Positions 12,106 to 59,200 of a stretch of 64,000 nt of DNA are shown here, piece after piece (within the stretch, counting starts at the first letter, position 1; every line of letters starts with the position of its first letter). The position numbers and the translations under genes were made by a program. The DNA lies in the IMG/VR virus record IMGVR_UViG_3300023184_000025, positions 124,001 to 188,000 of that record; one strand, 5' to 3'. Below the pieces are notes generated by a model. The model did no database searches, was not told where the DNA came from, and saw only the letters and a program-made list of their open reading frames with translations.

Positions 12106-12779
12106 TTCCAATTTTTATAGGGTATGACCCTAGAGAAGCAATTGCATTTCATACCTGTTCTAATAGTATTATTAGACATGCAACACAACCAGTGCAGATT
12201 ATTCCATTGGCATTAAACCTATTTAAAGACTACAAAGAAACACACACAGATGGCAGCAATCAATTTATCTATAGTAGATTTCTTGTGCCGCACTTGATGC
12301 AATTCAATGGATGGGCTATTTTTATAGACGGTGATATGGTTGTGCGTGACGACATTACTAAATTGTGGGAATTACAAAACCCCTATAAGGATGTATTGGT
12401 AGTCAAGCATGATTATAAAACAAAAATGTCTGAGAAATACCTTGGTTCAAAGAATGAAGACTATCCTAGAAAAAATTGGAGTAGTGTTATTTTATGGAAC
12501 TGTAATAGCTTTCCTAATCGTAAACTAACACCAGAATTTATACAAAAAGCCACAGGAGCCGAACTGCATCGATTTACCTGGATTGATGATAAACGCCTTG
12601 GTGAACTGCCACCTGAATGGAATTGGTTGCCCGATGAATACGGGCCAAACCCCGCGGCCAAGCTCTTGCACTATACCTTGGGCACTCCATGCTTCCACGA
12701 GTTTGCTGACACACCACAAGGCAACGAGTGGCACAGAGAACGCATACTCACTGAGTATTGTTTACAAAGGACACTATAA
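12102..12779 (+). CDS. GT-A glycosyltransferase (GT8-related)
   Basis: IFIGYDPRE, FIYSRFLVP, FIDGDM, PRKNWSSV, WNWL, LHYTLGTP. Confidence 0.82.
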   Translation: MIPIFIGYDPREAIAFHTCSNSIIRHATQPVQIIPLALNLFKDYKETHTDGSNQFIYSRFLVPHLMQFNGWAIFIDGDMVVRDDITKLWELQNPYKDVLVVKHDYKTKMSEKYLGSKNEDYPRKNWSSVILWNCNSFPNRKLTPEFIQKATGAELHRFTWIDDKRLGELPPEWNWLPDEYGPNPAAKLLHYTLGTPCFHEFADTPQGNEWHRERILTEYCLQRTL

Positions 12780-16785: not shown

Positions 16786-17429
16786 AATGGAGTCCATATT
16801 GTATTGCTCTTACTTTTAACTGGTGCGGCTTCATACGGGCCGCATAAATCATTGAGCCATTGCCTGTGTTGATCTTGCTGGCCGTTGTCCTCAATTAACA
16901 ACCAAGGTCTGTTGCGGCGTATAGTGTCACGACTTCCTTCAAGTACTGCATTTTCAAAACCCTCAACATCAATCTTGATCCAGTCCACAGATTGAAAATT
17001 GAATCGATCCAGCGTGGTCAACTCTCCAGTGTGTTGTTCAAACTCTGGGTTGGGCACAAACTCTGCCACTTGTTTGGTATGCCCACACTTGAGAGTTTGT
17101 AATTCAAATATTGCTGTTTGATCTCTATCGCCAAGACCCAAGTTATGCAATTCTACATTGTTATAATTTTCTAGATTTTTTTGCAGGACTTCAAAATTTT
17201 TAAGCACTGGTTCAAAACATACCACATGTTCAAACTGTTCAGCACTTGGTCTGGCAAATATACCAATGTTAGCACCAATATCAATCATTGTACGTTTTTG
17301 TGGAATATTATTATACACATAGTACCGGTAACGTTGTTGGTAATGTACATCTACAACATTTTGTAAACGCTCGCTGAAGAAACCATCAAGTGGTTCAGGA
17401 GAATACCAGAGTGAGTTAATTTTATACAT
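16782..17429 (-). CDS. FkbM family SAM methyltransferase
   Basis: IDIGANIG, VCFEP, LGLGD, DWIKIDVEGFE. Confidence 0.88.
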   Translation of the reverse strand: MYKINSLWYSPEPLDGFFSERLQNVVDVHYQQRYRYYVYNNIPQKRTMIDIGANIGIFARPSAEQFEHVVCFEPVLKNFEVLQKNLENYNNVELHNLGLGDRDQTAIFELQTLKCGHTKQVAEFVPNPEFEQHTGELTTLDRFNFQSVDWIKIDVEGFENAVLEGSRDTIRRNRPWLLIEDNGQQDQHRQWLNDLCGPYEAAPVKSKSNTIWTPL

Positions 17430-17430
17430 A

Positions 17431-17442
17431 TATAACTATTTA
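17431..17442. promoter_or_regulatory. Overlapping divergent late promoters in an 18-bp gap (TAAATA minus 17442-17437; TAACTA plus 17433-17438)
   Basis: 7 nt to ATG 17429 and 9 nt to ATG 17448; no SD on either side. Confidence 0.55.
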
Positions 17443-17447
17443 ACAAA

Positions 17448-18275
17448 ATGAAATTTAGTCTATTTAATAACTTTGGTGCGTTAAACTCTGCACCGGTATT
17501 TGCGGCCATAGAACAAGGTCTTAAATCTCTTGGCCATCAGGTAGTTCACAACGAATATGACGCAGATGCCGCTGTAATATGGTCGATGTTATGGACCGGT
17601 CGTATGCAAAGTAATCGAGAAGTTTGGAAAACATATCAAAACAAACCTATAATTGTTGCCGAAGTTGGAATGTTAGATCGAGGAAACACATGGAAAATTG
17701 GACTAAATGGTACCGGAGTATCTTGTTATAATTTCACTGATCTGATAGCATCAAGGGCAATAGATCTTGGATTAACATTGGCACCCTGGAGAACTGCTGG
17801 CGATCACATTGTGATTGCGCTACAACGTCAGGATAGTCAACAATGGTCTGGGCTACCGGATACACAAGCATGGGTTAATGATGTGTGCAATCGTTTAAAA
17901 AAATACACAGATCGCCCAATTGTTATTAGATCTCACCCAAGACAAAAAATAATACCAACAGCTATTTCCCCAAATAAGATTGCCAATTCGTACGATTGTT
18001 TTGATTTTAATCAATCATTAGAAAACGCATGGGCAGTTGTTAACTGGAGCAGTGGTCCTGGACCACAATCAATTATAAATGGTGTACCTGCATTTGTTGG
18101 CACAGATAGTCTGGCATCATTGGTTTCAACATTTAATCTAGCAGAAATAGAAAATCCGGCAATGCCGGATCGTAGTAGTTGGTTGAATATAATAGCACAT
18201 TCTGAATGGACACTAGACGAAATTGCGAGTGGTCATCCTATTCAAAGATTACTGCCTAGGTTGGTATCTCTGTAG
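17448..18275 (+). CDS. KpsS/capsule-synthesis-like GT-B transferase, paralog 3
   Basis: IVAEVG, IALQRQDS, IVIRSHPR, VVNWSSGPGPQSIINGVPAFV. Confidence 0.65.
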   Translation: MKFSLFNNFGALNSAPVFAAIEQGLKSLGHQVVHNEYDADAAVIWSMLWTGRMQSNREVWKTYQNKPIIVAEVGMLDRGNTWKIGLNGTGVSCYNFTDLIASRAIDLGLTLAPWRTAGDHIVIALQRQDSQQWSGLPDTQAWVNDVCNRLKKYTDRPIVIRSHPRQKIIPTAISPNKIANSYDCFDFNQSLENAWAVVNWSSGPGPQSIINGVPAFVGTDSLASLVSTFNLAEIENPAMPDRSSWLNIIAHSEWTLDEIASGHPIQRLLPRLVSL

Positions 18276-19226
18276 ATCTGCATTAACCATATCTTCAATC
18301 ATTTGTTTAAATGTTGTTTTTGGTTTCCAGTCCAATAGACTTCGAGCCCTGGTGCTGTCCCCGCATAGACTATATAATTCAGCAGGTCTTTTAAATCGTG
18401 GATCAGTTAGTACTTTGGATTCCCAGTTGGGAATATTAACATAATTAAACGCAACATCTAAAAGTTCTCGAATAGTATGTTGTTCGCCAGTGGCAATAAC
18501 ATAATCTTTGGCTTCATCTTGCTGTAACATTAGCCACATTGCTTCAACAAAGTCCCCGGCAAATCCCCAATCTCGGCGGCTGTCGATATTACCCAATGTA
18601 ATTGTTTCCTGCAATCCTAATTTAATACGTGCAACAGCATCTGTAACTTTGCGTGTAACAAATTCTTTTCCACGCAATGGACTTTCGTGATTGAATAACA
18701 CTCCTGAGCAAGCATAGAGACTATAACTTTCTCGAAAGTTCACAGTCATCCAGTGACTATACAGTTTACTAACCCCATACGGACTACGAGGAGTAAATGG
18801 GGTAGTTTCATTTTGTGTAGGTGTTGTGGCATTGCCAAACATTTCGCTGGTGCTTGCTTGATAAAAACGACTATTGGGACTATGTGTTTTAATTGCATTA
18901 AGAATATTAAGTGGACCCAATGAGTTGACTTCTGTAGTTAACTTATTCAAGTCCCAGCTAATTCCAACAAAGCTCTGAGCCGCAAGGTTATATATCTCTA
19001 CTGGTTTTAAACTTCTAAGTAGATGATTTATTGAATTTTCATCAGTGATATCACCTGTTACTAGTTCAATATCATTTTCAATTCCAAGCCATTTGATATT
19101 GTCAAGGTTTGGATTGCTATATCTTTTAACTAGTCCGTATACTTGATAATCTTTTTCAAGCAATAACTTTGCTAGGTACGGGCCATCTTGACCAGTCATT
19201 CCAGTGACAAAAGCAGTTTTTTTCAT
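18249..19226 (-). CDS. gmd: GDP-mannose 4,6-dehydratase
   Basis: TGMTGQDG, YNLAAQSFV, YQASTSEMFG, SPYGVSK, FNHESPLRG, FVTRK, RDWG. Confidence 0.95.
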   Translation of the reverse strand: MKKTAFVTGMTGQDGPYLAKLLLEKDYQVYGLVKRYSNPNLDNIKWLGIENDIELVTGDITDENSINHLLRSLKPVEIYNLAAQSFVGISWDLNKLTTEVNSLGPLNILNAIKTHSPNSRFYQASTSEMFGNATTPTQNETTPFTPRSPYGVSKLYSHWMTVNFRESYSLYACSGVLFNHESPLRGKEFVTRKVTDAVARIKLGLQETITLGNIDSRRDWGFAGDFVEAMWLMLQQDEAKDYVIATGEQHTIRELLDVAFNYVNIPNWESKVLTDPRFKRPAELYSLCGDSTRARSLLDWKPKTTFKQMIEDMVNADLQRYQPRQ

Positions 19227-38471: not shown

Positions 38472-41400
38472 TTAGGCAGCGGCTGCGCCACCACCAGAAA
38501 TAGTGCCAGTGTTCTGAATACGAACCGGAATGTAGATAAATTCAACTGCCTTGACAGGCTCAATTGCAATATCAACATACAATTCATTACGATCAATACG
38601 AGCTGGTGTGTTGTTACTTTCGTCACACACAACCAAGTAATCGTAGATGCCTCGTTTTGCCACAAGGTCAATCATTAACCCGTCAATGGCATTGCTGATC
38701 TCATTACGAGTGATCTGATCGTTTGGTTCGAACACAAACTGCTTACCAATCTCCATTAAACGTCCACGGATGAATGCAACTAAACGAGCCACGTTAATAC
38801 GATCCATAGCACTAGTCATTGCACTCTCGGTCTTGTTACCATAGTTTGTGATGCCCACACCTGGAATGAATGTAATTGGGTTGATCTTGTGTTCATACAA
38901 GATATCTCTTACACTTTGACCTGTTGCAATAGTTACAAATTCACCAGTTAAACTGTTGATGTAACCAATACGTTCAGCATTGTCAACAATACCACGACGT
39001 ACACCAGCTGGTGCTAACCAGGGAAATGCCACTTCGTCACTGCGAACAATTGTACGTAACATCATGTGACTCGATGGTTGAACAACCTGTCCACCGCTCA
39101 AGTCAGTGGTTTGACATTGTGGGTAGAACACACCAAGGTATGGATCGCTGGTAGTAATACCATCTTCGCCACCAATGCCCAAACCGCCTTGGTTTGTGGC
39201 CCAGTCAACCAAGCTATTGCCGCTAGGGCCAAGGCGTAATGGTGTGTCACCAATGACAAACGCAGTATTATTGCGCTCATTGTTTAGAGCCACCATGTTG
39301 ATCATTAACTCTGGATACTGTGGGCAAGCAATCAGGTTAAATTGTTGTTGCTCTTCACGTAGCGTATCCTGTGTATCAATTGCTGATTTCAATGCGGCAA
39401 CAATGATTTCACGCTGTGCTTTACGTCCCATGTATGGACTGCCGTCACTCTTGTTACCACTAACAGTTACCCAGGCATTAGTTTCAAGCAATGCCCAATA
39501 ATCGCTGTCAGTAGGCACGTTACCTGTGCTGTTGGCAACGCATACATAAATTACACCGTTGTACAGAGTTTTATTTCCTACTAGGTAGGCAGTCTGAGAC
39601 GAGTATGGATCAACGCTGAAGTCTTGTGCATTGAAATAATCAACGCTGAACTGTTTAACGTTATATCCACTACGACGAGTATTAAATAACAACATACCTG
39701 CTGGATATAAGTCAGCTTCGGGCGCATCTAAGTCTAGATAGTTGCTGGTTAGCAAACTTATAATTGTTGGATATGCATCAGACACTGGATCAGTTGTGCC
39801 ATTTGGTGCCCAACGTGCATCAGCAAACAATACACCGTTTTGGCTAGTTTGGTCTGTGTTGTTGATAGCAACCCAGGTATCAGCGCCGTCAATTTCTTCA
39901 TAGCGATAAATCAATGGGTAATTTTCTAAGTCAGCTGTGTCAATCCACAAATCTCCATACACAAGAGAAGTACCGTCTGTTTGTGTAGTTGGCTGTGATG
40001 CGCTGATAATAGGTCCATTTGGATCAGTTACTGTTAGGTCATAGCCGCGGACATCATTGTCAACTGTTCTATAACCAGCCCAGCCGTTTCCGTCTTGAAT
40101 CATAATGTCAACTTGTGTAGCCGATGAGTAATACCAGTTGCGACCGTTTGCAGGATCTTGGCTTGGAGCATTTGCACTGGCAGTATAATCTAATGCCACC
40201 CAGCTTGAAAGAACTAATGCACTGGTAATGTCATCTGCGTTTGAGTAACGAACGCCAGTTACGGTTGTATTAATGCCAGCATCTCCCACTGGATCGTTAG
40301 TTGTGCTGAGTAATTCAATTACGCCGCCACGACTATGAACCATAGAAATTGATCCGTCGGAGTTTATATTTGCAGAAACATACGGAACATTTGCACTTGA
40401 AACTGCGGCAACAAATGCTGCCGATGTAGTTCCACTAATAGTTACTTCAACCGGAGTACTCATTGTGCTACTATTTGGTGCACTGGCAGAAATAGTAAAT
40501 TGACTACTAGTAGTAAATGTTGGAGTAGTTGTATCGCCGGTGATGGTTGTAGCACCTGTGGACATTCTCTCAAAAATTTCCAGAGTAAATGTATTGTTGT
40601 TGTTTGGTAGCTCAGGTGCTACGTTATATTGCACATAAAGTGAGCCGGCAGTGATATTTTTGCCGCCGCCCGATGGGTCAAGTCCTTTGTTAGCGGCTGC
40701 ATCATCTTGGTAGATTGGAGCAGTTTTTGTAACAAAGCTAGCCAATACAGTACTGTACTCTTTAACAATAATACTTGCACCTGCATTTACAGCAGTTACC
40801 ATATTCCAAACTGATCCAGTTGGACGTGGTTGAGTATCTGTACTTCTCCAGCGAGGAACTGTGTAGTTAGGACTTTGTTGTAATACTGGGGCGTAATAAA
40901 TGCCATCTTGTATGCCCAACTCAGACAGCATAACGTCTGAGCTGTCAGGGTCAATGTTGATAATGCCGCCGTCTGCTGAAGAGCCATCGCTTTCTGCATC
41001 CGAATTGGCGGCTAAAATAAGTCGACTACTGCTGTTGGCAGATGCAACAACACCAGGAATTGCGGCAGCGTTAATGTCAGTTACCAAGTTTGCCAGTGTG
41101 GCATTTGGTGACGATCTTGTTGAAACTGCAACTCCGTTAATAATAATTGTCTGCGTTGCAGTCATTTGGAATGTAACAGAGTTAGTGCCCTGTATTGTTG
41201 GCCACTGCTGTTGCCAATCCATACTACCAACCAGGTACCATGCATTGTCAGTTGACTTATAGTAAACTGGGTTTTTGTTGTTTGTTGCAACTACGGCGTA
41301 GTCACCAATTGATCCAATACTTGCTTTAGGCACACCTGAAGTTAAGTCTGCTGTGTCTGTGATTACCATTGGAGTTTGTGAACTAAACGCACCAGTGGTT

Positions 41401-41852
41401 GCATTCCATTGTAGGATACCCCAAATGCTTGAAGTTGTATCCAACCAGTATGTGCCATTGGCTGGCGCACCAGTTGGGCGAACCAAGCTGGCAGTTAATT
41501 CAGACAAGTCAACGTCAGCACGTTGAACATAAGCACGATTACTGATACCCAACACCGAGTGCGCGGCAAGTAAGCCATACTCGTTGAGCTCGTAGCCGTT
41601 GATCGGTGTGCCGGCTGTGGTTTTGTAGAAGAACGGATTGCCAAACGTTGCGGCAAGATCTCGCTGGCTGGTGATTAAATACACTTTGCCTGCGTTAACT
41701 TTTAATGTTCCAGCGGCAACACCAGTTCCTGTTCCGGAAACTTTATTCTGCGCAGTGGCAAGAAGGATATACGGTACCGAATTTGTCGCGGAAGGTATAT
41801 AATTAGACTCGTCAATAACTGTGACTTGTACGCCTGGGGATACTAGTGCCAT
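38472..41852 (-). CDS. gp18: Contractile tail sheath protein, enlarged (1126 aa)
   Basis: MALVSPGVQVTVIDES, FGNP, PWLAPAGVRRG, INPI, RINVARL, FEPND, AVEFIYI. Confidence 0.95.
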   Translation of the reverse strand: MALVSPGVQVTVIDESNYIPSATNSVPYILLATAQNKVSGTGTGVAAGTLKVNAGKVYLITSQRDLAATFGNPFFYKTTAGTPINGYELNEYGLLAAHSVLGISNRAYVQRADVDLSELTASLVRPTGAPANGTYWLDTTSSIWGILQWNATTGAFSSQTPMVITDTADLTSGVPKASIGSIGDYAVVATNNKNPVYYKSTDNAWYLVGSMDWQQQWPTIQGTNSVTFQMTATQTIIINGVAVSTRSSPNATLANLVTDINAAAIPGVVASANSSSRLILAANSDAESDGSSADGGIINIDPDSSDVMLSELGIQDGIYYAPVLQQSPNYTVPRWRSTDTQPRPTGSVWNMVTAVNAGASIIVKEYSTVLASFVTKTAPIYQDDAAANKGLDPSGGGKNITAGSLYVQYNVAPELPNNNNTFTLEIFERMSTGATTITGDTTTPTFTTSSQFTISASAPNSSTMSTPVEVTISGTTSAAFVAAVSSANVPYVSANINSDGSISMVHSRGGVIELLSTTNDPVGDAGINTTVTGVRYSNADDITSALVLSSWVALDYTASANAPSQDPANGRNWYYSSATQVDIMIQDGNGWAGYRTVDNDVRGYDLTVTDPNGPIISASQPTTQTDGTSLVYGDLWIDTADLENYPLIYRYEEIDGADTWVAINNTDQTSQNGVLFADARWAPNGTTDPVSDAYPTIISLLTSNYLDLDAPEADLYPAGMLLFNTRRSGYNVKQFSVDYFNAQDFSVDPYSSQTAYLVGNKTLYNGVIYVCVANSTGNVPTDSDYWALLETNAWVTVSGNKSDGSPYMGRKAQREIIVAALKSAIDTQDTLREEQQQFNLIACPQYPELMINMVALNNERNNTAFVIGDTPLRLGPSGNSLVDWATNQGGLGIGGEDGITTSDPYLGVFYPQCQTTDLSGGQVVQPSSHMMLRTIVRSDEVAFPWLAPAGVRRGIVDNAERIGYINSLTGEFVTIATGQSVRDILYEHKINPITFIPGVGITNYGNKTESAMTSAMDRINVARLVAFIRGRLMEIGKQFVFEPNDQITRNEISNAIDGLMIDLVAKRGIYDYLVVCDESNNTPARIDRNELYVDIAIEPVKAVEFIYIPVRIQNTGTISGGGAAAA

Positions 41853-44834: not shown

Positions 44835-45278
44835 TTACCTATTTAGAATTGAATAGTATTGAAGGAAAACGTTTGGCTCTGACAGATCTAACAATATTTC
44901 ACCATTAAAACCAATGTAGCTTGTGGTCCATGTTTGTCCATCTGTTGTATTGATAGTTAATCCTTGATGGATAAATTTTTCATTTAGATTAAACCCATCA
45001 AGATTAACTCCGAGTATTTTAACATATAAATCTTGTGTAATTTTTCCATCCTGATCAAAAATCACATCAGTATTGTGGTCTTTGCCACTGAAACGTAACT
45101 TTACCACTGCTGGTAGATCTAAATAAATTTTTGGTTTAGACAGATACTGCCCGTCAACTAATTCTGGCTGGACCTGGGTTACGTTATCACCCGAAGACAA
45201 TACAACAGTCATGAGTTTATCATTGACACAACCAAATTCAAACTCAATTTCAATATAGCAATGGTTAAGTTTTTTCAT
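44835..45278 (-). CDS. Hypothetical beta-rich protein coupled to the radical SAM gene
   Basis: Overlaps the radical SAM stop; no family recognised. Confidence 0.7.
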   Translation of the reverse strand: MKKLNHCYIEIEFEFGCVNDKLMTVVLSSGDNVTQVQPELVDGQYLSKPKIYLDLPAVVKLRFSGKDHNTDVIFDQDGKITQDLYVKILGVNLDGFNLNEKFIHQGLTINTTDGQTWTTSYIGFNGEILLDLSEPNVFLQYYSILNR

Positions 45279-46725
45279 TCATCAACGTTTCAAGGACAAA
45301 ATGGTTATCCATACTCTGGTGCACGGTGTATCCTAGTGATTTACTAAATTCGGCTAGCTCATTTACCCATTCGGCTCTTAAGGCAGGAGTACTATTAATT
45401 TCTTCGTTGACCCAAGATTGAGGACTTGGGCCAATCATCTTTATACCCAACTCATCTTTATGCCGATCTAGGTATGTGTTAGTAAAAACAGCAAGGCTAC
45501 CACCCCAGTTAACTGAAATCACATCCTTGAATCTAGTATTATCAATCAACCATTGTTTTGCATAATCAATGTCTTTTCTTACTTCTGTGATCCAACCAAC
45601 CAGTGCTAAAAGGTTAATCTTAATTCCGTATTTTTGTGCTTGCTCTAGATGGAATTCAATTGAACTATTTGAGAATTTTTTACCAATATGATATCTAATA
45701 TGTTCATTTAAATTCTCAAGACCAACAATTAAAATTTCAGCGCCGCTACTGGCTACCAGTTCCCAGTCAGTTTCTGAGCTGGCTGTTTTCTCTCTAAAAA
45801 TATAATAACCCGACCAGCTAAAAGAATTATCTGGGTTGTTACGATTGTACTCGCTGAGTAGCGTAATAAAACGATTAAATTCTTTAAGATTTCCGTTGGT
45901 TAACGCATCTTGAAATTTAAAAGTACGAATATTATATTTTTTATTTTGCTCTATCATCTCGTTGAAAATGTTGTCTGCTGTTCTCCAGGTGAAGTTTTTC
46001 CAATTTTCAATGTAATCACAAAACTTACATTTCCTAACACATCCTCTACTACCCATTATGCCAAGAATCTTTTTCCCGTAAACAGAAAAATTGTAGTCAG
46101 AATAATCAGGCGTGGGCAACAGAGACAATTCTTCTCTGTTTAACTCTTTCCAGTCAGAAGTATTGATACCTGGATATTCATTATTTCCTGTAAGAAGTTC
46201 ATACAAAGAGTGCTCGCCGTCGCCACGAATAATGTAATCAACCAATCCAATATTAACCAACTCTTCAGCCAATGGAAGTGGGCCCATAAAACCGTGTTCA
46301 GAACATCCTGGACCGCCCACAATGATCTTGATGTTAGGATTGATTTTTTTTATAAAATACACAATCCATCTAAGACTATTCTGACACAAATAACTAAAAA
46401 CGCTAATGCCCACATACTTTGGATTATATGACACTATCTGTTCTGCAATGCTGATAAACAAGTCCGATAACCAATCTTTAACCTCTTTGTCCACATGCCC
46501 ATTAAAGAAAAAAGATATGATTTCATTTTTGTTTGGGTGTTCGTTAACAAGTTTAACTATGTCTCCATTTAAGTCCACTGCTAGACATGATAGTCCGGCT
46601 TTTTCTATTACTGGTTTTAATGAGGCTGGGGCCATTAATGCAAAATTAGTTTCCGTCCAGGGAATAGAAATAGCAACCATATCTTTGGTTTCGTTGTTTA
46701 TATTATTAAGGCTTGTAAAATTCAT
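45265..46725 (-). CDS. Cobalamin-binding radical SAM enzyme (class B-like); start uncertain
   Basis: B12-binding region GISVF, IIVGGP, GDGE; SRGCVRKCKFC (CxxxCxxC); GLE. Confidence 0.88.
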   Translation of the reverse strand: MNFTSLNNINNETKDMVAISIPWTETNFALMAPASLKPVIEKAGLSCLAVDLNGDIVKLVNEHPNKNEIISFFFNGHVDKEVKDWLSDLFISIAEQIVSYNPKYVGISVFSYLCQNSLRWIVYFIKKINPNIKIIVGGPGCSEHGFMGPLPLAEELVNIGLVDYIIRGDGEHSLYELLTGNNEYPGINTSDWKELNREELSLLPTPDYSDYNFSVYGKKILGIMGSRGCVRKCKFCDYIENWKNFTWRTADNIFNEMIEQNKKYNIRTFKFQDALTNGNLKEFNRFITLLSEYNRNNPDNSFSWSGYYIFREKTASSETDWELVASSGAEILIVGLENLNEHIRYHIGKKFSNSSIEFHLEQAQKYGIKINLLALVGWITEVRKDIDYAKQWLIDNTRFKDVISVNWGGSLAVFTNTYLDRHKDELGIKMIGPSPQSWVNEEINSTPALRAEWVNELAEFSKSLGYTVHQSMDNHFVLETLMNEKT

Positions 46726-46750
46726 TTTTAGTTGTCTACGGGCAATTCCA

Positions 46751-46782
46751 ACAAGTGTAACAGATACACTTGTACCTGTCAA
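46751..46782 (-). promoter_or_regulatory. Sigma70 promoter TTGACA-N17-TACACT with inverted repeat over the -10
   Basis: -35 at 46782-46777, -10 at 46759-46754; ACAAGTGTA/TACACTTGT arms at 46751-46759 and 46765-46773. Confidence 0.65.
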
Positions 46783-46808: not shown

Positions 46809-47573
46809 TTAACCAATGACCAATGTCAGCGGCTGTGATCCATCTACATAGAGTTTTAGATCTTCTATGCATCTATCCATCTGAGTTTGTGCTTCGCTCT
46901 TCATTGCTGATCCATTTAGGGTGCCACCACCTTGAGGTCCAGCAATGGTGCCAAACTTTTCACGTGCTTCACCAATGATCATTTTAGAAGCGGCAACCAT
47001 GTAATCACGTATCCATTGACTAATTTGAAAGTCGCTTAACAAAGTAATTTCAGGTTTGAGATTGTAGGTCCATAACAACACTACTTCGCCAGTGCCTTTT
47101 GGGTCACGTATTAGCTGTAGTTTTTTTGTAACAGGATTCCAGGTAAAGTTGATATAGCCACCAAACATACGTGCGGCCAGTTCCACATACTGTTGATAAA
47201 AGTCGTAGGTTGCAAGTCCGCCTTGCTGTTGATTAAAGTTTAATAGATAAGTGTTTAATGTTGCGGCGCCAAACGGGTCAAAACTTGTGCCACCGCCTCC
47301 GGTGCTGAGGCCAATTGTGCGTCTGAAAATTTGTCTGACTTGTGTAACTTCTTGTGGCAACGTGTATTCATTTACATCGTTAAGTAATTCCATAAAGCTG
47401 TAGCTTTCTTCATAGGCATTTTGCGCACGTTGGCGATAAGTGCCTATAGTTTTCTGATAAGCGGCTTCGAAGTGTGCTGGGTCTAGCTCAATGTCAATTA
47501 TTTGACTGGCTAGTTGTAACTGCACATATTCTATCAGTTGTTTCTTCAGCGGGTCTAGTGTTTGATCTGCCAT
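46809..47573 (-). CDS. gp13: Neck protein (T4 gp13-like)
   Basis: LQL..QIIDIEL, YTLP, WIRDY..A..KMIIG..R.KF, LNG..MKSEA; TAAATA plus AAGGAG SD. Confidence 0.85.
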   Translation of the reverse strand: MADQTLDPLKKQLIEYVQLQLASQIIDIELDPAHFEAAYQKTIGTYRQRAQNAYEESYSFMELLNDVNEYTLPQEVTQVRQIFRRTIGLSTGGGGTSFDPFGAATLNTYLLNFNQQQGGLATYDFYQQYVELAARMFGGYINFTWNPVTKKLQLIRDPKGTGEVVLLWTYNLKPEITLLSDFQISQWIRDYMVAASKMIIGEAREKFGTIAGPQGGGTLNGSAMKSEAQTQMDRCIEDLKLYVDGSQPLTLVIG

Positions 47574-50634: not shown

Positions 50635-52017
50635 ATGCAACAGTTTTTTTATGATGAACAGATACGAAGATTTTTGTTACAATTTACAAGAATTTTTTCT
50701 AACTTTGCAATTGAATATGGTAGAGACGAAAGCGCAAACGCAACATTGATACGTGTGCCAGTTCGCTATGGTGATGCCACACGACAAGCACAGACTATCT
50801 TGCAGGAGAACTCTGCTAACAGTTTGCCTTCTACTCCATTAATGACATTTTACATAACTGGTATGGACTACGATCGACCAAGGATGCAAGATCCTTATCA
50901 TGTTAATAAAATGCAGGTTCGACAACGATATTACGATACCAGTACTGATTCCTACGAAACCACACAAGGCAATGCATTTACCATTGAACGATTGATGCCT
51001 GTTCCTTATAAAATGACTATTGGATTAGATATATGGACTTCAAACACCAATCAAAAAATGCAGTTGTTTGAGCAAATAGCAACATTGTTTAATCCTGCTC
51101 TTGAACTTCAGGGAACCGATAACTTCATTGATTGGACCAGTTTAAGCGTAGTCGAGTTAGAGTCTGTCACTTGGACTAGTCGGACTATTCCGCAGAATAC
51201 AGAAAATCCCATAGACATTATGAACATGAGATTTGGTATTCCAATTTGGATCAGTAGTCCTGCTAAAGTTAAAAAGCTTGGTGTTGTTGATAAAATCATT
51301 TATTCTGTGTTTAACAGTTTAGGTGATGCCAGCGACGCTATCACCAACAATGACTTATTACTAGGAACTAGACAACAGATTACACCATATGGTTACCAAA
51401 CTTTGTTAATTGGTAATAAAATACAGATTCTTAAAGAAAGAACAACAGTAGATCAATCAAATTCAAACACAAACTTGCCGGATAGTCCTCCTAGTAACGA
51501 ACTATGGCCAGCAGTGGTTGGAATGTATGGTGTACTGAGACCAGGCATTAGTCAGATTCGACTTGAGGATCAATGGGACGGAACAGGAAATGTTATTGGT
51601 ACTGTGTCTTACGATCCTACAGATGAGCGATTTATGTTGTTTGATGTAGACATAGATACCATTCCTCAGAATACGCTGGCCCCAATTGATTCTGTTATCG
51701 ACCCCTTGATCAGTGGTCCAGGTGTGGGTCTTCCATCAGCTGTGGATGGCACAAGATATTTGTTATTAAATGCTGTGGGGGCTATTGGAAATATTAAGCC
51801 TGCTGAAGCCTGGGGTCCGTTGGTGGCCAACGCTAATGATATTGTTCAGTACATTGATGGCATCTGGGACGTAGTGTTCAGAGCTGTTGACAGCACTGAA
51901 AACTTGCAATTTTGTACAAACCTAACCACAGGGTTACAATATCGATGGACTGGCAGTGAATGGGTTAAAAGTTATGAAGGTATATATTCTGGAGGCACCT
52001 GGAGCCTTGTGCTATGA
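50635..52017 (+). CDS. gp15: Tail sheath stabiliser/terminator (T4 gp15-like) with C-terminal extension
   Basis: FFYDEQIRRF..QF..IFSN, VPVRYG, PVPY, QLFEQIATLFNP. Confidence 0.88.
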   Translation: MQQFFYDEQIRRFLLQFTRIFSNFAIEYGRDESANATLIRVPVRYGDATRQAQTILQENSANSLPSTPLMTFYITGMDYDRPRMQDPYHVNKMQVRQRYYDTSTDSYETTQGNAFTIERLMPVPYKMTIGLDIWTSNTNQKMQLFEQIATLFNPALELQGTDNFIDWTSLSVVELESVTWTSRTIPQNTENPIDIMNMRFGIPIWISSPAKVKKLGVVDKIIYSVFNSLGDASDAITNNDLLLGTRQQITPYGYQTLLIGNKIQILKERTTVDQSNSNTNLPDSPPSNELWPAVVGMYGVLRPGISQIRLEDQWDGTGNVIGTVSYDPTDERFMLFDVDIDTIPQNTLAPIDSVIDPLISGPGVGLPSAVDGTRYLLLNAVGAIGNIKPAEAWGPLVANANDIVQYIDGIWDVVFRAVDSTENLQFCTNLTTGLQYRWTGSEWVKSYEGIYSGGTWSLVL

Positions 52018-52445
52018 TCAATGCTGTTGGTGTTTGGTTTTATAGTTTAGACACCCAAAGGTATTTGTATCTGTTAAGGAACGATCCTAAACATCCAAAT
52101 ACCTGGGGATTGCCTGGCGGCAAAACAGAACCTAAAGAAACTCTACTAGATACAATACACAGAGAATGTGCCGAGGAACTTGGTTTTTTTCCGTTTCATG
52201 TTAAATTAATTCCTTTAGAACAATTTACCAGTGCCGATGGATTATTTTGCTATCATACATTTTTCTGCTGTGTTGCTGGAGAGTTTAAACCAACTCTCAA
52301 TTATGAACACATAGGATATGCCTGGATAGACACGGGTACGTGGCCTAAGCCTATGCACCCTGGATTATGGTCAACGGTTAATTTTGAAGCAGTACAAAAT
52401 AAAATTGATACATTAAAAAAAACCGTTACACGTCACAGTAACTAA
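52014..52445 (+). CDS. Nudix hydrolase
   Basis: Nudix box WGLPGGKTEPKETLLDTIHRECAEELG. Confidence 0.9.
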   Translation: MINAVGVWFYSLDTQRYLYLLRNDPKHPNTWGLPGGKTEPKETLLDTIHRECAEELGFFPFHVKLIPLEQFTSADGLFCYHTFFCCVAGEFKPTLNYEHIGYAWIDTGTWPKPMHPGLWSTVNFEAVQNKIDTLKKTVTRHSN

Positions 52446-53100
52446 CAAATTTTCTAAAATCGTAACAACTTACATTTCGATTGTTCTTCCACATGTCTGG
52501 CATATTTGTTTCTGTGCCAACTAATATGAACTGAGTTGTTTTATAAGCCGTAAACACTGAGTTAACATGTTCTTTCCAGGCAATTCTACCAGCTTGATTA
52601 TCAGTGTCATTGTTATATCCAAGTAAGAATACCTCGTTGTGGCCATCAAATGCCGCAATATAAACTGCCGCTGCCAATTCATCAAGCCGCCCAATGTGTG
52701 GCACTAGATAAAGTTTACCAGGGTACTTAGAAACATTTCTTGCTGTTGTATAAACAATATTCTGGTCAGAATATCCAGTTGCATCAATTTCTTGTAGATG
52801 ACTATCTTCTGAAGTGACATAAAAATCAAACTTCATTGACTTCCACAAGTCTCCTGATCCGTATGTCTGTAATTTTTTCTTTCCAAGTAATCCACCTTTG
52901 TGTTTTTCTAATTTTTTAAAATTAAATTGGTCCTGATCAAGTGCGCTGCCAATGACTGCGGCTCGACCTGAAATATGTTGGTTTTCAATTGGATTGGGTA
53001 ACCATTCTTTTGTTTGGTTTTTTTGATTTCCTGACCAGACTAAATTTGTAACTACAAATTCCCCAGTGTAATCTGCACGGTATCTATTAATAATGTTCAC
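52426..53100 (-). CDS. Maf/DUF115 (MptE-like) fold protein, possible glycosyltransferase
   Basis: RAAVIGS, QTYG, DFYVT, AAAVYIAAFDG.NEVFLLGYN pattern; GTGA-coupled to the fibre gene. Confidence 0.5.
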   Translation of the reverse strand: MNIINRYRADYTGEFVVTNLVWSGNQKNQTKEWLPNPIENQHISGRAAVIGSALDQDQFNFKKLEKHKGGLLGKKKLQTYGSGDLWKSMKFDFYVTSEDSHLQEIDATGYSDQNIVYTTARNVSKYPGKLYLVPHIGRLDELAAAVYIAAFDGHNEVFLLGYNNDTDNQAGRIAWKEHVNSVFTAYKTTQFILVGTETNMPDMWKNNRNVSCYDFRKFVSYCDV

Positions 53101-54689
53101 AAACGTCCTCCTATAACTTCAATTACCCCTGGTTCCGAACTTGAATAGTTTTCCAATGCTTTACCAATGATGCACCCTGGTTGATACTCAGCCAGATTTA
53201 ATTTTTTGGCAACTCCTGGAATATCGCTAGAAACTAGTCGATCTCCTTTTTTGATGTCGCCAACAACACGACAAGGAACTCGTCCTAGCAAAGCAACCAA
53301 AACTGCATTAGCATTATTTTCTCCGGCATTCATTATAAATGCAGGATTTGTGGAAATAATGCCGGCAACGGCTGGACTGCTAGAAACAGTGGTAATTGTT
53401 ACTTCAGCTTTGCCACCAAATTCAACAACTGTACCTGGTGGATAAATTTTATCAGCTACATATTTTTCTGCAACGTCAGCATACTGTGCAGATGTGGCCT
53501 TGGCAAATACTGTGTTGTAATATACACTTGAGCTACCAACATTACCGACGCCGTTGGCGTTGCTATTCACAATATTGCCACCAGTTATTGTGCCAGTTCC
53601 TACTGTTAATCCAGCAAAGGTTGGAGTACTGCCAGTTGTTAATCCTGAAATGTCTGCTTGTGCCAGCGTCACTGCACCGGTGCGACTGGCAACCGACGTT
53701 ACTTTGGCATCAGTGTACGTGGTACTGATACTAGATGCAGTCCAAGTTCCGCTAGTCAACGTACCAACACCAGTAATGTTGGTCTGTGACGCAGTGGTCA
53801 ATGTTCCCACAATGCTTGTGCCGCTTAGATTACCTGAAGTGATATTGCCTGTTACTGCCAATGATCCCAGTGTACCAACACCAGTAATGTTGGTCTGTGA
53901 CGCAGTGGTCAATGTTCCCACAATGCTTGTGCCGCTTAGATTACCTGAAGTGATATTGCCTGTTACTGCCAATGACGTCAATGTGCCCACTGATGTGATA
54001 TTTGTTTGTGCGGCTGTCTGTAAAGTACCTGTTAAGTTCGTTGCAACAACAGCAGTAGCACCAATATTGCCTACATTGGCATTGCCGCTAGCATTGAGTG
54101 TTCCAGTGATATTTGCACCAGTTGTTGATACAACAACCACGTTGCTGGTATTAGCAATGCCAACTGTGACATTGCCACCCGAGCTTACAACTCTGACATT
54201 ACTTGTACCACTTTGAATACTGGTTGCATCAATGCCAGTCAGTTGACTACCATTGCCCAAGATGTAACTGCCTGTGATGTTACCTGTTACACCAAGGGTA
54301 CCGGCAATGTTGGCACCTGTGGATGCTACAACAACTACGTTGCTGGTGCCTGCCACGCCTACAGTGACGTTGCCGCCTGAGCTGACCACTCTAACATTAC
54401 TTGTACCACTCTGGATGCTGGTTGCATCAATGCCTGTTAGCTGACTACCGTTGCCTAAAATATAGTTTCCCGACACGTTGCCAGTTACACTTAAACTTGT
54501 TCCGGTATATGTTTTGTTGGCTATAGTTTGAACACAATTTTGTCCAACTAAAGCAAACCCACCAAGGGTAGCACCATCAGCAATGCGCAACACATGAAGA
54601 TCTGTATCAACGGAAATTTCCCCGTTGGCTCCAAGAAAGTTATTATTTTGTACGGTTGTTCCTCGTCTAAATTGGACTACTGTTGGCAT
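53097..54689 (-). CDS. Tail fibre-like protein with QFRRG N-terminal anchor and C-terminal autocleaving chaperone (peptidase G2-like)
   Basis: MPTVVQFRRGTT; GNIT/GNLS repeats; SAQYADVAE..Y..GTVV..GG..EV, VALLGRVP, IIGKALE. Confidence 0.8.
   Translation of the reverse strand: MPTVVQFRRGTTVQNNNFLGANGEISVDTDLHVLRIADGATLGGFALVGQNCVQTIANKTYTGTSLSVTGNVSGNYILGNGSQLTGIDATSIQSGTSNVRVVSSGGNVTVGVAGTSNVVVVASTGANIAGTLGVTGNITGSYILGNGSQLTGIDATSIQSGTSNVRVVSSGGNVTVGIANTSNVVVVSTTGANITGTLNASGNANVGNIGATAVVATNLTGTLQTAAQTNITSVGTLTSLAVTGNITSGNLSGTSIVGTLTTASQTNITGVGTLGSLAVTGNITSGNLSGTSIVGTLTTASQTNITGVGTLTSGTWTASSISTTYTDAKVTSVASRTGAVTLAQADISGLTTGSTPTFAGLTVGTGTITGGNIVNSNANGVGNVGSSSVYYNTVFAKATSAQYADVAEKYVADKIYPPGTVVEFGGKAEVTITTVSSSPAVAGIISTNPAFIMNAGENNANAVLVALLGRVPCRVVGDIKKGDRLVSSDIPGVAKKLNLAEYQPGCIIGKALENYSSSEPGVIEVIGGRL
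53761..53975. repeat. Tandem direct repeat, period 111 nt (37 aa), about 100 nt identical
   Basis: Copies begin near 53761 and 53872. Confidence 0.9.
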
Positions 54690-56203: not shown

Positions 56204-59200
56204 TTATAGTCGACCTACCACAACTTCAATAACGCCTTCTGTGCCATTAAAGTCGGATAATGCCTTACCAATAACTGTACCAATCTGTGGACTTGTGCAA
56301 GCACAAGCACGACCGTCACCTGCAGAAATCATCATGTCACCTTTACGTACTGTGCCAACTACTTTGGTTGGAACACGACCGGTCAACGCAACAATTGCTG
56401 TGTATTCAGCTTCTAATCCTGAGTTCATGATGTAACTTGGATTTGTAGAAATAACACCTGCCACACTACTTGCGCCAGTGCCAGCTATGGTAACTTCTTT
56501 TGATCCGCCAAACATCATAACAGTACCCGGTTCATACGTAGCGTCTGATTCGTAGTACTCTGCCAAGTCAGCGTACTGAGCTGATGTTGCTTTGGCAAAC
56601 ACAGTATTAAAGTATGTTGTACTTGAACCAATATTACCAACACCGTTGGCGTTGCTATTTACAATGTTGCCACCAGTAATGGTTCCTGTACTGACACTCA
56701 GGTTACCACCAGTGATGTTGCCAGTAACTGTCAATGATCCCAGTGTACCAACTGAAGTAATGTTGGTTTGTGCCGCAGTGGTCAATGTTCCCACAATGTT
56801 GGTACCCGATAGGTTACCACCAGTGACGTTGCCAGATACACCAAGTCCACCTATGATAATAGCAGTACCTGTAGCGGTTGTAGTAGAAGTTGTGTTGGGT
56901 GCATTCAGCTTCATTGCCACGTTGGCTGCCATACTGCCAGCAACTGCAAATCTAATTTGTCCACCAATGTCAACAGCGCCAAGTACTAGATCACTTGGAT
57001 TACCTGCGGCCACATTACCTGTAACGTACAAATACGCATCATTAGGAGTAACTGAGGTACCCATGGCGTTGTTGAGAACTGCTGTGGCACCGTTATATGT
57101 GCTACTGGCAATACCAAAGTCAGCATAATATGTGGCGTCATTACCGTTGTTTGAAGTCAACACCCAGTCACTTGTGGCTGTGTTTCCTGCACTTTGGTTC
57201 TGATTGTTAATCTGAGCGTAGTCATCGTACTGTGATACAAAGTTGACCACAGACTGTGGTAGTATACTAAATCCAGCTGGCAGACCAGCGTACAAGGCAT
57301 TGAAACCAGTGGATGCATTACCAAAGAATTGACCTGAGTTACCAGATATCTGTTGGATGTTACCCGCAATGGTTGTTGTACCAGACACATACAAGTTACC
57401 AATTGTGGCATTACCTGTTGACATGGCAATGCCTCCTGGTGTAATATTACCAGTAACTGTCAATGAACCTAAAGTACCCACGGCAGTAATATTTGTCTGA
57501 CTTGCAGTGGTTAATGTTCCCACAATGTTGGTACCCGATAGGTTACCACCTGTGATGTTGCCAGATACACCTAGTGTACCAGTAATATTGGCTCCTGTGG
57601 AGGCAAATACTGCCACATTTGATGTAGCACCAATACTAACTGTGGCATTGCCGCCCGAGCTCACAACTTTAACATTACTTGTGCCACTTTGAATACTAGT
57701 TGCATCAATACCGGTTAGTTGACTACCATTACCTAGTACGTAGTTACCAGTGATGTTGCCTGTTGCAGTGATATAACCTGTGACATTGGCACCTGTACTA
57801 GTCACAACCGCAACGTTGGCTGTGCCAGCTGAGCTAACAGTGACGTTGCCACTGGCAAATGCTCTAACATTACTTGTACCATTCTGTATACTTGTGGCGT
57901 CAATACCAGTCAACAGACTACCATTACCTAGTACGTAGTTACCAGTGATGTTGCCTGTTGCAGTGATATAACCTGTGACGTTGGCACCGCCTGAGCTTAG
58001 AGTTTGTACTGTTGCACCTGCAATATTGGCACGAACGTTACCACCTGAAGTAAGCACAGATACTGCACTGGTACCGTTGGCAATGGTTGTTGTGTCAACG
58101 CTTGAGCTAGCAATGGTTGCAGGAGTTGTACCATCTGCGGCATAGAATGCCATTTGTCCATTCACTGCTTTGAGCTGTAGGTTGCCTAGGTAAATTGTGC
58201 TACCAGACACATACAAGCTATTCCACCAGCTTGTTGCATTGCCCAATGAGAACGTTGCATTGGCTGTTGGCAAAATATTACCTGTGGCTGAAAGTGTTCC
58301 CTGGCCGTCAACTGCCTCAAGAATTGCAGAACCTGTGGCATTTTGAAGTGCTGTAACTGTGGTTGTAGTTGTTAAAATACGTGCATCAATCACGTCTGTT
58401 GTCAACGGAGCTTCAGTGAATGTCAGCACATTGCCTGTTACAGAATAAGCACTGGTTGGAATCTGTACAACGCCGTTGATTGCAACAATAGTACTGGCAG
58501 TTGTGGAATTTTCACTGAGTACAAACGCTGTTTGGCTGTTAGTCCCGTTGAATTGATCAGAAACAACAACAGTAAATGTTGTACCTGCTGACGTCCACTT
58601 GGAGTTGTCATAGTACTCTAAACTGTTAGATGATGTGTTAAAACGCATCATACCAGTTACACCACTACCTGGACGCTGTAGTGTATTACCCACTGGCATA
58701 ACAATACTAGTTGCAGAATTAAATGCCACTAAGGCATTAACTGTTTGAGTTGCATTTCCAAAGCTGGCTGTGTTTGCTCCGGCATCCACATAAAATACAT
58801 TGGCGGCACCACCATTCACTGCAAAGTCAACGTCGCCCAGGGCTGTGTTAAAGTTTACTCGTCCATTTGTGTCAGTAATGTTATCACCACTGATTTGAAT
58901 GTTGCCTATGTTGGCTTGGCCAGCTGTGGTAATGTTACCGCCAGTGATGTTACCAGTTACACCCAGTGTACCTACAACAGTACCGTTGCCGGTTACTGCC
59001 AGTGTAGCAATATTGGCAATACCTGCTGTGGTTACGTTACCACCAGTGATGTTACCAGTTACACCCAGTGTGCCTACAACAGTACCATTGCCGGTTACTG
59101 CCAGTGTGCCAATGTTGGCAATACCTGCTGTGGTTACGTTACCACCAGTGATGTTGCCTGTGGCCACAATCAAACCAGCTGTGCCTAGGTTACCCACATT

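What the first reader, a model, noticed from the sequence alone, without database searches (positions are those of the whole stretch)
52426..54689. Maf/DUF115-like gene translationally coupled to a Ser/Thr-rich fibre: a dedicated fibre glycosyltransferase?
Seen: a GTGA overlap makes this the last gene of the fibre operon, with a pattern resembling the DUF115 core though degenerate (GSA for GNG, GYN for GFD). Known: Maf proteins O-glycosylate flagellin with CMP-activated nonulosonic acids and are encoded beside their substrate. Inference: the same substrate-adjacent logic applied to phage tail fibres, linking the fibre block to the glycan cluster.
Basis: partly seen in the sequence, partly recalled or inferred. 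Interest (0 to 1): 0.65.

Follow-up and report, generated by a model that had tools for sequence, protein, structure and literature searches.

The report
Degenerate Maf-like gene ending fibre operon
The last gene of this freshwater jumbo phage's tail-fibre operon has the fold of a flagellin-type (Maf/sialyltransferase-like) glycosyltransferase, but it has lost that family's sugar-donor motifs and lid, so it is probably a non-catalytic helper and an intact paralogue 13 kb upstream is the likelier enzyme.

Summary
A 224-aa ORF (52426-53100, minus strand) starts at a GTG inside a GTGA overlap with the stop of a 530-aa fibre gene. It is the last gene of the fibre operon, convergent on NUDIX-gp15.

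No Pfam, PHROG or NCBIfam model reaches it. Its AlphaFold model (pLDDT 85.6) matches the Maf glycosyltransferase best (5mu5, Z 11.0), then MptE and Cst-I.

It belongs to an undescribed phage-only family of stand-alone proteins of about 190-260 aa. All 156 related loci in which the downstream flank could be scored hold a member in this same slot.

Most members keep sialyltransferase-like motifs (GNGxSR, YGCN, [S/A]G, GFD) and a lid of about 29 residues. The window's protein lies in a well-supported clade that deleted the lid and lost those motifs, yet is strongly conserved.

Every record with such a degenerate gene also carries an intact 194-aa paralogue inside the fibre operon, just outside this window. 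Three near-complete relatives with an intact terminal gene lack it.

Best reading: a pseudo-glycosyltransferase acting as a fibre-module accessory. This is inferred, not shown. The genome has no NeuB or CMP-sugar synthetase, so the proposed link to the GDP-mannose-type glycan cluster is unsupported.

The parts
52426..53100 (-). 224-aa stand-alone Maf/GT42-fold protein ('A1'): lid-less, motif-degenerate member of a phage family; last gene of the fibre operon
   Evidence: ORF and translation. No Pfam, PHROG or NCBIfam hit. 957 homologues of about 221 aa. AF2 pLDDT 85.6. 5mu5 Maf Z 11.0, 8sd5 MptE Z 9.6, 2p56 Cst-I Z 8.8. Degeneracy shown.
53097..53100 (-). GTGA start/stop overlap between the fibre gene and A1
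   Evidence: Sequence. In 48 of 57 non-redundant related loci the start overlaps the upstream stop by 4 nt (29) or 1 nt (19).
53097..54689 (-). 530-aa tail fibre gene
   Evidence: Mtd_N, E 3.9e-8. PHROG tail/tail-fibre families. Ser+Thr 25%.
54567..54677 (-). Mtd_N-like N-terminal domain of the fibre (residues 5-41)
   Evidence: PF18454, 33.5 bits, above the cut-off.
53613..54512 (-). Ser/Thr/Gly-rich repetitive shaft (about residues 60-359), with internal 111-bp and 198-bp tandem duplications
   Evidence: Ser+Thr 34%. Tandem repeats at 53761-53975 (100% identical) and 54115-54490 (78%).
53100..53612 (-). Conserved C-terminal domain of the fibre (residues 360-530), probably a distant Peptidase_G2-type intramolecular chaperone; also ends the 1676-aa fibre
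   Evidence: Alignment A3, 63% mean column identity. Sub-threshold PF11962 hits in 21 of 32 members, best E 2.4e-4. It is the C-terminus of the gene directly upstream of A1 in 47 of 57 loci.
52014..52445 (+). Convergent NUDIX hydrolase gene whose 3' end overlaps A1 by 20 nt, followed upstream by gp15
   Evidence: PF00293, E 4.4e-14, and T4-gp15_tss. NUDIX+gp15 follow the A1 homologue in 80 of 80 loci.

Best explanation
Shown: the 224-aa protein is a stand-alone member of a phage-specific family with the Maf/GT42/MptE-type Rossmann fold. In aquatic T4-like and jumbo myoviruses this family is fixed as the last gene of the tail-fibre operon, start-coupled to the preceding fibre gene and convergent on NUDIX-gp15.

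Shown: most members keep the CMP-sugar-transferase-like motifs (GNGxSR, YGCN, [S/A]G, GFD) and a lid of about 29 residues. The window's protein lies in one clade that deleted the lid and lost those motifs, yet stays strongly conserved.

Shown: the records with this degenerate form all carry a second, intact, hairpin-less 194-aa paralogue ('A2') about 10-13 kb upstream in the same fibre operon.

Inferred: A1 no longer transfers sugar. It survives as a non-catalytic accessory of the fibre module, either an acceptor-binding or specificity partner for A2, or a fibre maturation factor. It uses the conserved scaffold, the N-terminal beta-hairpin that A2 lacks, and its clade-specific conserved residues. 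A2, not A1, would be the enzyme if the fibres are glycosylated.
For: Fold: Z 11.0 over 180 residues to Maf 5mu5; 9.6 to MptE; 8.8 to Cst-I; Foldseek prob 0.99 to 8sd5.

Homology to the canonical forms: hhalign A1 against A2 gives prob 98.5%, E 2.4e-15. The A1 profile finds A2 in the phage's own genome at E 3.2e-4.

Motif census over 76 family representatives:
- Lidded, n=50: GNG 42, CN 46, [AST]G 43, D/E 46.
- Lid-less, n=26: GNG 1, CN 1, [AST]G 3, D/E 17.
The query sits in an SH-aLRT 100 clade of 21 lid-less rows plus 2 others.

Within A1, the position aligned to the invariant Asp of GFD is Asn in 33 of 39 and never Asp. No Ser aligns with the S-S-G of A2. The position aligned to A2 D45 is Asp or Glu in only 25 of 39. 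The S and D counterparts, and an upstream acidic residue, are required in Maf enzymes.

Same slot: convergent NUDIX+gp15 in 80 of 80 degenerate-type loci. Convergent gp15 in 76 of 76 loci found with the canonical-form profile and having 1.5 kb or more downstream; NUDIX adjacent in 68 of those. 62 of the 76 carry GNG+CN.

Start/stop overlap in 48 of 57 loci.

Complementarity: an A2-type orthologue is present in 6 of 6 records with a degenerate terminal gene, and in 0 of 3 near-complete records with a canonical one.

A2 itself: Maf Z 11.7, Cst-I Z 8.9.

Strong purifying selection on A1: 64% mean column identity and 34 invariant positions.
Against: No experiment, and no predicted contact with a fibre or with A2.

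The canonical pocket of A1 still holds clade-conserved residues (G51, S52, D55 in 38 of 39; Y80; Y117; G161; Y162). It may therefore still bind a ligand.

Geobacillus Maf works with Asn at the GxD position, so 'GYN' alone does not prove inactivity.

The A2 co-occurrence rests on 9 records that are phylogenetically clustered. G006 and G007 carry other weak paralogues.

MptE and thiamine pyrophosphokinases share the fold without a lid.

Confidence: 0.5

Rival explanations
1. One reading: A1 is itself an active, dedicated O-glycosyltransferase that modifies Ser/Thr of the co-translated fibre, using a divergent donor-binding site.
For: Maf-like fold. Strictly conserved, start-coupled place after a fibre gene. 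Canonical orthologues in the same slot look catalytically intact. G51, S52, D55 and Y162 are conserved in the canonical pocket. An Asn at the GxD position is tolerated in GkMaf. The fibre shaft is 34% Ser+Thr.
Against: GNG, CN and the S-G serine are lost, and the whole lid is deleted. In GT42 enzymes the lid carries the phosphate-binding tyrosines and the catalytic His (my knowledge of Cst-II). After lid loss the motifs drift freely between lid-less members, which is the signature of relaxed constraint on the old site. The genome has no CMP-sugar pathway. An intact paralogue is always present alongside.
Confidence: 0.2
2. A1 is a Tfa/gp38-like tail-fibre assembly or tip-accessory protein unrelated to glycosylation, built on an exapted transferase scaffold.
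For: It holds the classical position directly downstream of, and coupled to, the last fibre gene. In two lineages it sits next to a PF16778 tail assembly chaperone gene. It follows fibres of different types, IMC-type or Gly_rich_2. It has lost the catalytic motifs.
Against: No similarity to known Tfa or gp38 families. 47 of 57 upstream fibres already end in a probable self-chaperone domain. This view does not explain the complementary presence of A2.
Confidence: 0.15
3. A1 has been repurposed to other chemistry on a small molecule or nucleotide (MptE- or thiamine-pyrophosphokinase-like diphosphoryl transfer, or nucleotide binding). It might work with the neighbouring NUDIX hydrolase rather than with the fibres.
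For: MptE (Z 9.6; Foldseek prob 0.99), SteA and TPK folds are among the best matches, and they lack a lid. The NUDIX gene is the invariant convergent neighbour (80 of 80). Clade-specific invariant His, Asp and Cys residues (H42, H67, D152, H154, C222, D223) could form a new site.
Against: NUDIX-gp15 adjacency exists without A1 in PA5oct, so NUDIX goes with gp15. A1 is transcribed with the fibres on the other strand. Its nearest relatives carry sialyltransferase-type, not kinase-type, motifs. No pterin or thiamine context.
Confidence: 0.1

Closest known systems
Maf (motility-associated factor) flagellin nonulosonic-acid glycosyltransferases, e.g. Magnetospirillum magneticum Maf, PDB 5mu5 (Pfam PF01973 central domain)
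   Same: Best structural match for both A1 (Z 11.0, 180 residues) and A2 (Z 11.7). Encoded beside a Ser/Thr-rich filamentous protein. Canonical family members keep the Ser and Asp motif positions that mutagenesis shows to be needed in Maf.
   Different: Maf has about 630 aa, with N- and C-terminal acceptor-binding domains or a GlfM partner. The phage proteins are bare core domains of 190-260 aa. No PF01973 hit reaches the cut-off. A1 lacks the catalytic motif residues. The genome has no CMP-nonulosonate pathway.
GT42 sialyltransferases Cst-I/Cst-II of Campylobacter jejuni (PF06002; PDB 2p56, 1ro7)
   Same: Same GT-A-variant Rossmann fold (Z 8.8-8.9). A2 and the lidded relatives share the G-N-G-x-S, C-N and S-G...G-x-D motifs and a lid after GxD.
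   Different: Only sub-threshold sequence similarity (best E 0.0016, in 6 of 30 A2 members). No invariant His in A2 that would correspond to the Cst-II catalytic base. A1 has none of the motifs and no lid.
MptE 6-hydroxymethylpterin diphosphokinase (PDB 8sd5) and thiamine pyrophosphokinases
   Same: Small, lid-less proteins of the same fold. 8sd5 is the only high-probability Foldseek match (prob 0.99, TM 0.46) and gives Z 9.6.
   Different: Archaeal cofactor-pathway enzymes. No such pathway context here. The phage family's intact members look like sugar transferases, not kinases.
Pseudo-glycosyltransferase partners and specificity factors of protein O-glycosylation (GlfM with Maf-2; GtfB with GtfA on streptococcal serine-rich adhesins, the latter from my own knowledge)
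   Same: By analogy only: a catalytically inert or non-enzymatic partner, encoded in cis, presents a Ser/Thr-rich acceptor to the active transferase. This fits the pattern of A1 (degenerate, with hairpin) plus A2 (intact, without hairpin).
   Different: GlfM is a four-helix bundle and GtfB has a GT-B fold. No A1-A2 or A1-fibre contact has been shown or predicted here.

Membership tests
Pfam PF01973 (DUF115 / MptE-like / Maf_flag10) | Sequence scores at or above the curated gathering cut-off (34.6 bits) | tested here: not met
   No PF01973 hit for A1 at E<=0.1. 0 of 39 family members hit at E<=1. The genome-wide scan finds only A2, at 12.4 bits. A2 family: 9 of 30 members hit weakly, best E 0.017.
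Pfam PF01973 (DUF115 / MptE-like / Maf_flag10) | Modified GT-A/Rossmann fold of the Maf central domain and MptE | tested here: met
   VIA-align: 5mu5 Z 11.0 (rmsd 4.1, 180 aligned); 8sd5 Z 9.6. Foldseek: 8sd5_B prob 0.99.
Maf flagellin glycosyltransferases | Residues required for activity: the acidic residue equivalent to MmMaf 324, the conserved Ser, and Asp/Asn equivalent to MmMaf 415 | tested here: not met
   By alignment through A2 and the canonical relatives: no Ser at the S-G position; the GxD position is Asn in 33 of 39, otherwise T, H, C or L; the upstream acidic position is D/E in only 25 of 39. The mapping is motif-based, not a superposition.
Maf flagellin glycosyltransferases | Multidomain architecture with an acceptor-binding N/C-terminal (TPR) domain, or a GlfM partner | tested here: not met
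   224 aa, a single domain. No relative longer than 316 aa among 1.84 billion representatives.
Maf flagellin glycosyltransferases | Genomic association with a CMP-nonulosonic acid (or Kdo) donor pathway | tested here: not met
   No NeuB (PF03102) and no CTP_transf_3 (PF02348) in the 345-kb, 99%-complete genome. The window's glycan cluster is of GDP-mannose type. A host-supplied donor remains possible.
GT42 sialyltransferases (Cst-I/II, PF06002) | G-N-G-P-S loop, C-N motif, T/S-S-G and G-x-D motifs, and a lid carrying phosphate-binding Tyr and the catalytic His | tested here: not met
   A1 has G-S-x-x-D, S/T-G, no S-G, G-Y-N, and 11 residues where the lidded relatives have about 29. No PF06002 hit.
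MptE / thiamine pyrophosphokinase-type diphosphokinases | Same fold together with Mg-ATP-binding acidic residues and a cofactor-pathway context | tested here: inconclusive
   The fold is met (Z 9.6; TPKs Z 6-7.6). The catalytic residues could not be mapped because no coordinates or reference alignment were available. No pterin or thiamine genes were seen near the gene.
Tail fibre assembly chaperones (Tfa, gp38, PF16778-type) | Sequence or fold similarity to a known chaperone family | tested here: not met
   No Pfam or PHROG chaperone hit. The fold is Rossmann-like, unlike known Tfa or gp38. Only the gene position is shared.
Phage family defined here (stand-alone hairpin + Maf/GT42-like core, terminal gene of the fibre operon) | N-terminal YRxDYxGE...EWxPN hairpin; AAFDGH-x-E-[IV]-F-L-L-G core; C-terminal D-[LVI]; position convergent on NUDIX/gp15 | tested here: met
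   Alignments A1 and A4. Synteny in 80 of 80 and 76 of 76 loci. Profile search finds 202 representatives.

The most novel reading that the evidence does not exclude
Aquatic jumbo and T4-like myoviruses O-glycosylate their tail fibres with a hitherto undescribed, minimal Maf/GT42-fold transferase encoded as the terminal gene of the fibre operon. In one clade the system has split into two parts. The intact 194-aa paralogue (A2) does the chemistry. The degenerate, lid-less terminal protein (A1) has become a pseudo-glycosyltransferase that recognises the fibre and presents it. This would be a viral counterpart of the Maf-2/GlfM or GtfA/GtfB two-component protein O-glycosylation systems.
Probability: 0.2. 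Interest if true: 0.75.

Novelty: new variant of a known kind. Interest (0 to 1): 0.55.

Why it matters
Virion glycosylation is established for only a few phages, and I know of no dedicated tail-fibre glycosyltransferase (my own knowledge). My literature searches found no description of Maf/DUF115-like genes in phage fibre modules.

This analysis defines a large family that current Pfam, PHROG and NCBIfam models do not detect. It has 202 representatives at 50% identity and thousands of sequences, and it is tied to the fibre operon of abundant freshwater and marine myoviruses.

It also shows a natural enzyme-to-pseudoenzyme transition, with a compensating paralogue. That gives a testable system for asking how phages modify or mature receptor-binding fibres. 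Fibre modification bears on host range, on escape from fibre-directed defences, and on the annotation of 'hypothetical' genes in jumbo phages. It also warns against calling this particular gene a glycosyltransferase from its fold alone.

Tried and rejected
(1) Sequence routes for A1 gave nothing useful:
- Pfam, PHROGs and NCBIfam.
- tblastn against 50,697 phage records.
- The profile against PDB sequences returned only spurious ankyrin hits on 'AAFDGHKE'.
- Foldseek against PDB was dominated by TIM-barrel noise, apart from 8sd5.
- The ESM Atlas shape search found only the protein's own family.

(2) Complex prediction of A1 with the fibre's C-terminal domain (alignments A3 + A1) returned 'no answer' (score 0.00). 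That is neither for nor against binding. It used the only job, so the more informative A1+A2 pair could not be tried.

(3) I first took the conserved partner to be the fibre's C-terminal (Peptidase_G2-like) domain specifically. I softened this, because 10 of 57 loci have Gly_rich_2 fibres, a PF16778 chaperone gene or other genes upstream instead.

(4) The 359-aa gene after A1 in locus L001 looked GT10-like to me ('FVTEK'). Pfam did not support this, so I dropped it.

(5) PA5oct gp323, next to its NUDIX gene, is unrelated to A1 (hhalign prob 0.2%).

(6) Promoter and terminator scans were at shuffle level.

(7) No RNA runs hold the locus, so co-transcription could not be checked and read laying was not used.

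(8) Literature searches for MptE structure details and for phage MptE-like proteins gave nothing usable; one search was a rejected query.

(9) The careful ML tree did not finish. The quick IQ-TREE result is the one reported.
Full report
WHAT IS THERE

The finding covers two minus-strand ORFs. One is a 530-aa fibre gene at 53097-54689. The other is a 224-aa ORF at 52426-53100, here called A1. Its GTG start overlaps the fibre's TGA stop: GTGA on the minus strand at 53097-53100.

Homologues start at the same alignment column, mostly with ATG (52 of 57), so the start is right. A1 is the last gene on its strand. Its 3' end overlaps the convergent NUDIX gene (52014-52445) by 20 nt. The T4 gp15-like tail completion gene lies beyond that.

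The fibre has three parts:
- An Mtd_N N-terminus.
- A repetitive shaft with 34% Ser+Thr. The whole protein is 25%, and the neighbouring fibres are 21-25%.
- A conserved C-terminal domain of 171 aa.

GENOME AND HABITAT

The window is bases 124001-188000 of a 345,154-bp virus record that CheckV estimates as 99% complete. By gp15, the nearest cultured relatives are jumbo phages: Phosso, Atu_ph07 and PA5oct, at 33-36% identity. Near-identical DNA occurs in lake and freshwater metagenomes from several studies. No RNA run holds it.

FOLD AND FAMILY OF A1

No Pfam, PHROG or NCBIfam model matches A1, and no deposited phage genome encodes it. Metagenomes hold 957 homologues of about 221 aa. Their alignment A1 has 64% mean column identity and 34 invariant positions.

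The AlphaFold2 model built on that alignment has pLDDT 85.6. An exhaustive structural comparison ranks these chains first:
- Maf glycosyltransferase 5mu5: Z 11.0, 180 residues aligned.
- MptE 8sd5: Z 9.6.
- Cst-I 2p56: Z 8.8.
- SteA, thiamine pyrophosphokinases and GT29 sialyltransferases follow.

Foldseek gives 8sd5 a probability of 0.99. Viral models with the same fold include proteins annotated DUF115 or MptE-like.

AN INTACT PARALOGUE JUST OUTSIDE THE WINDOW

A genome-wide PF01973 scan found one weak hit, 2 kb beyond the window's end. It is a 194-aa gene here called A2 (L005:1249-1833, minus strand). It lies inside the same minus-strand fibre block, about 13 kb upstream of A1.

A2 carries textbook motifs: VLGNGVSR, YGCN, FSSGP, LLGFDMGP. 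It has 2,774 homologues. Members hit PF01973 (9 of 30) and CST-I (6 of 30) below threshold. Its model matches Maf at Z 11.7 and Cst-I at Z 8.9.

The A1 and A2 profiles align with 98.5% probability (E 2.4e-15, 157 columns).

THE FAMILY AND ITS DEGENERATE CLADE

A profile search of 1.84 billion representatives found only 202 relatives. None is longer than 316 aa, so there are no fusions.

Relatives of 240-258 aa share A1's N-terminal hairpin (YRxDYxGE...EWxPN). They also keep GNGxSR, YGCNAxYRD, AGAxAxYLAAFDGH, GFD, and a lid of about 29 residues with the sequence NNNVYADTxxY.

The motif census over 76 representatives of 190 aa or more:

| Group | n | GNG | CN | [AST]G | D/E at GxD |
|---|---|---|---|---|---|
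| Lidded | 50 | 42 | 46 | 43 | 46 |
| Lid-less | 26 | 1 | 1 | 3 | 17 |

On a quick ML tree the query falls in an SH-aLRT 100 clade of 21 lid-less rows plus 2 others.

Within A1:
- The residue aligned with the GFD aspartate is Asn in 33 of 39 sequences and is never Asp.
- No Ser aligns with the S-S-G of A2.
- The residue aligned with A2 D45 is acidic in only 25 of 39.

The Ser, the Asp (Asn in Geobacillus Maf) and an upstream acidic residue are needed for activity in Maf enzymes (bioRxiv 10.1101/2020.06.03.131540).

Between lid-less members the old motif positions differ freely (GSxxD, GAGPS, DSIK, STHD and others), while the scaffold stays conserved. That pattern points to loss of the ancestral site, not to a tuned variant of it.

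SYNTENY

In 80 of 80 viral loci with an A1-type gene, convergent NUDIX and gp15 follow it.

Among 57 non-redundant loci with enough upstream sequence:
- 48 have a 4-nt or 1-nt start/stop overlap with the upstream gene.
- In 47 the upstream gene ends in the same C-terminal domain as the window's fibre, although the proteins range from 80 to 1,102 aa.

That domain gives sub-threshold Peptidase_G2 (intramolecular chaperone) hits in 21 of 32 members. The remaining loci have Gly_rich_2 fibres or a PF16778 chaperone gene upstream instead.

The canonical lidded genes occupy the same slot. Of the loci found with their profile that have 1.5 kb or more downstream, 76 of 76 have convergent gp15 and 68 of 76 have NUDIX adjacent.

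PA5oct has the gp14-gp15-NUDIX arrangement and a convergent fibre gene, but no such terminal gene.

COMPLEMENTARITY WITH A2

An A2-type orthologue (232-355 bits in the relatives) is present in all six records with a lid-less terminal gene where the region is covered: G000, G001, G002, G003, G005 and G010.

It is absent from three near-complete records (87-100%) whose terminal gene is canonical: G006, G007 and G009. Those have only weaker paralogues of 30-78 bits besides the terminal gene itself.

The sample is small and phylogenetically clustered, so this is suggestive only.

DONOR CHEMISTRY AND THE GLYCAN CLUSTER

The window's glycan cluster lies at about 9-20 kb. It encodes the following:
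- GT17/GT2-like and GT8-like transferases.
- Several methyltransferases.
- A cytidylyltransferase-like/cupin protein.
- GDP-mannose 4,6-dehydratase.

The whole genome has no NeuB and no CMP-nonulosonate/Kdo synthetase. Nothing ties that cluster to A1.

INTERPRETATION

Shown:
- The Maf/GT42/MptE-type fold.
- Membership of a phage-specific family anchored at the end of the fibre operon.
- Loss of the lid and donor motifs in the clade that contains this gene.
- Strong conservation despite that loss.
- Co-occurrence with an intact paralogue.

Inferred:
- A1 is no longer a sugar transferase.
- It acts as a non-catalytic accessory of the fibre module, perhaps presenting fibres to A2.

The second inference rests on analogy with Maf-2/GlfM (bioRxiv 10.1101/2023.12.03.569772) and with GtfA/GtfB (my own knowledge).

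The rival readings are given above with their refutations:
- An active divergent glycosyltransferase.
- A Tfa-like chaperone.
- A repurposed diphosphokinase-like enzyme.

The one complex prediction, A1 with the fibre C-terminal domain, gave no answer and counts for nothing either way.

VERDICT

I rate it a new variant of a known kind, of moderate interest. The interest lies mainly in the undescribed fibre-operon family and its transition from enzyme to pseudoenzyme.

Noticed in passing
Outside the window: L005:1249-1833 (-) = G000:C1:190005-190589 (would be about window 66005-66589): An intact 194-aa Maf/GT42-like paralogue (VLGNGVSR, YGCN, FSSGP, LLGFDMGP) embedded among small fibre-like genes of the same operon. 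It has 2,774 homologues. It also matches three places in pelagiphage HTVC008M; the best of these lies beside carbamoyltransferase and 2OG-Fe(II) oxygenase genes, not fibres.
   Followed up: yes
window 53100-53612 (-) and window 56207-56665 (-): The 530-aa and 1676-aa fibres end in the same conserved C-terminal domain of about 160-170 aa (YADLAEMY...GRVPCRVVG...). It gives sub-threshold Peptidase_G2 (autoproteolytic intramolecular chaperone) hits. If real, it would be cleaved off after trimerisation.
   Followed up: partly
window 53761-53975 and 54115-54490: Two in-frame tandem duplications inside the fibre shaft: 111 bp x1.9 at 100% identity, and 198 bp x1.9 at 78%. The perfect copy suggests a very recent duplication or ongoing length variation of the fibre.
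   Followed up: no
window 45265-46782 (-): A 505-aa radical SAM / B12-binding-domain protein, encoded directly beside the 254-aa ORF (46809-47573) that occupies the gp13 position of relatives, within the structural region. This is an unusual enzyme for that place. A related lineage (L001) instead has a 505-aa Trp_halogenase-family gene inside its fibre block.
   Followed up: no
window 9292-19226: Glycan/LPS-type island: GT17/GT2-like, two Methyltransf_24, a cytidylyltransferase-like+cupin fusion, GT8-like, FkbM methyltransferase and GDP-mannose 4,6-dehydratase. Several ORFs of 240-320 aa between them have no family hit. The genome has no nonulosonate genes.
   Followed up: partly
L001:7600-7998 and L084:1386-1862: In two lineages the gene directly upstream of the A1 homologue is a PF16778 'phage tail assembly chaperone' gene rather than a fibre. 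In L001 an extra 359-aa gene of unknown family sits between A1 and NUDIX.
   Followed up: partly
G007:C1:301474-301959 and 46152-46565; G006:C1:125591-126028: Related jumbo-phage records with a canonical terminal gene carry further, more distant paralogues of the family elsewhere in the genome (30-78 bits to the A2 profile). Their context was not examined.
   Followed up: no
window 38472-41852 (-): The tail sheath is unusually long (1,126 aa). Only its last ~100 residues match Phage_sheath_1C. This is typical of jumbo myoviruses but was not analysed.
   Followed up: no
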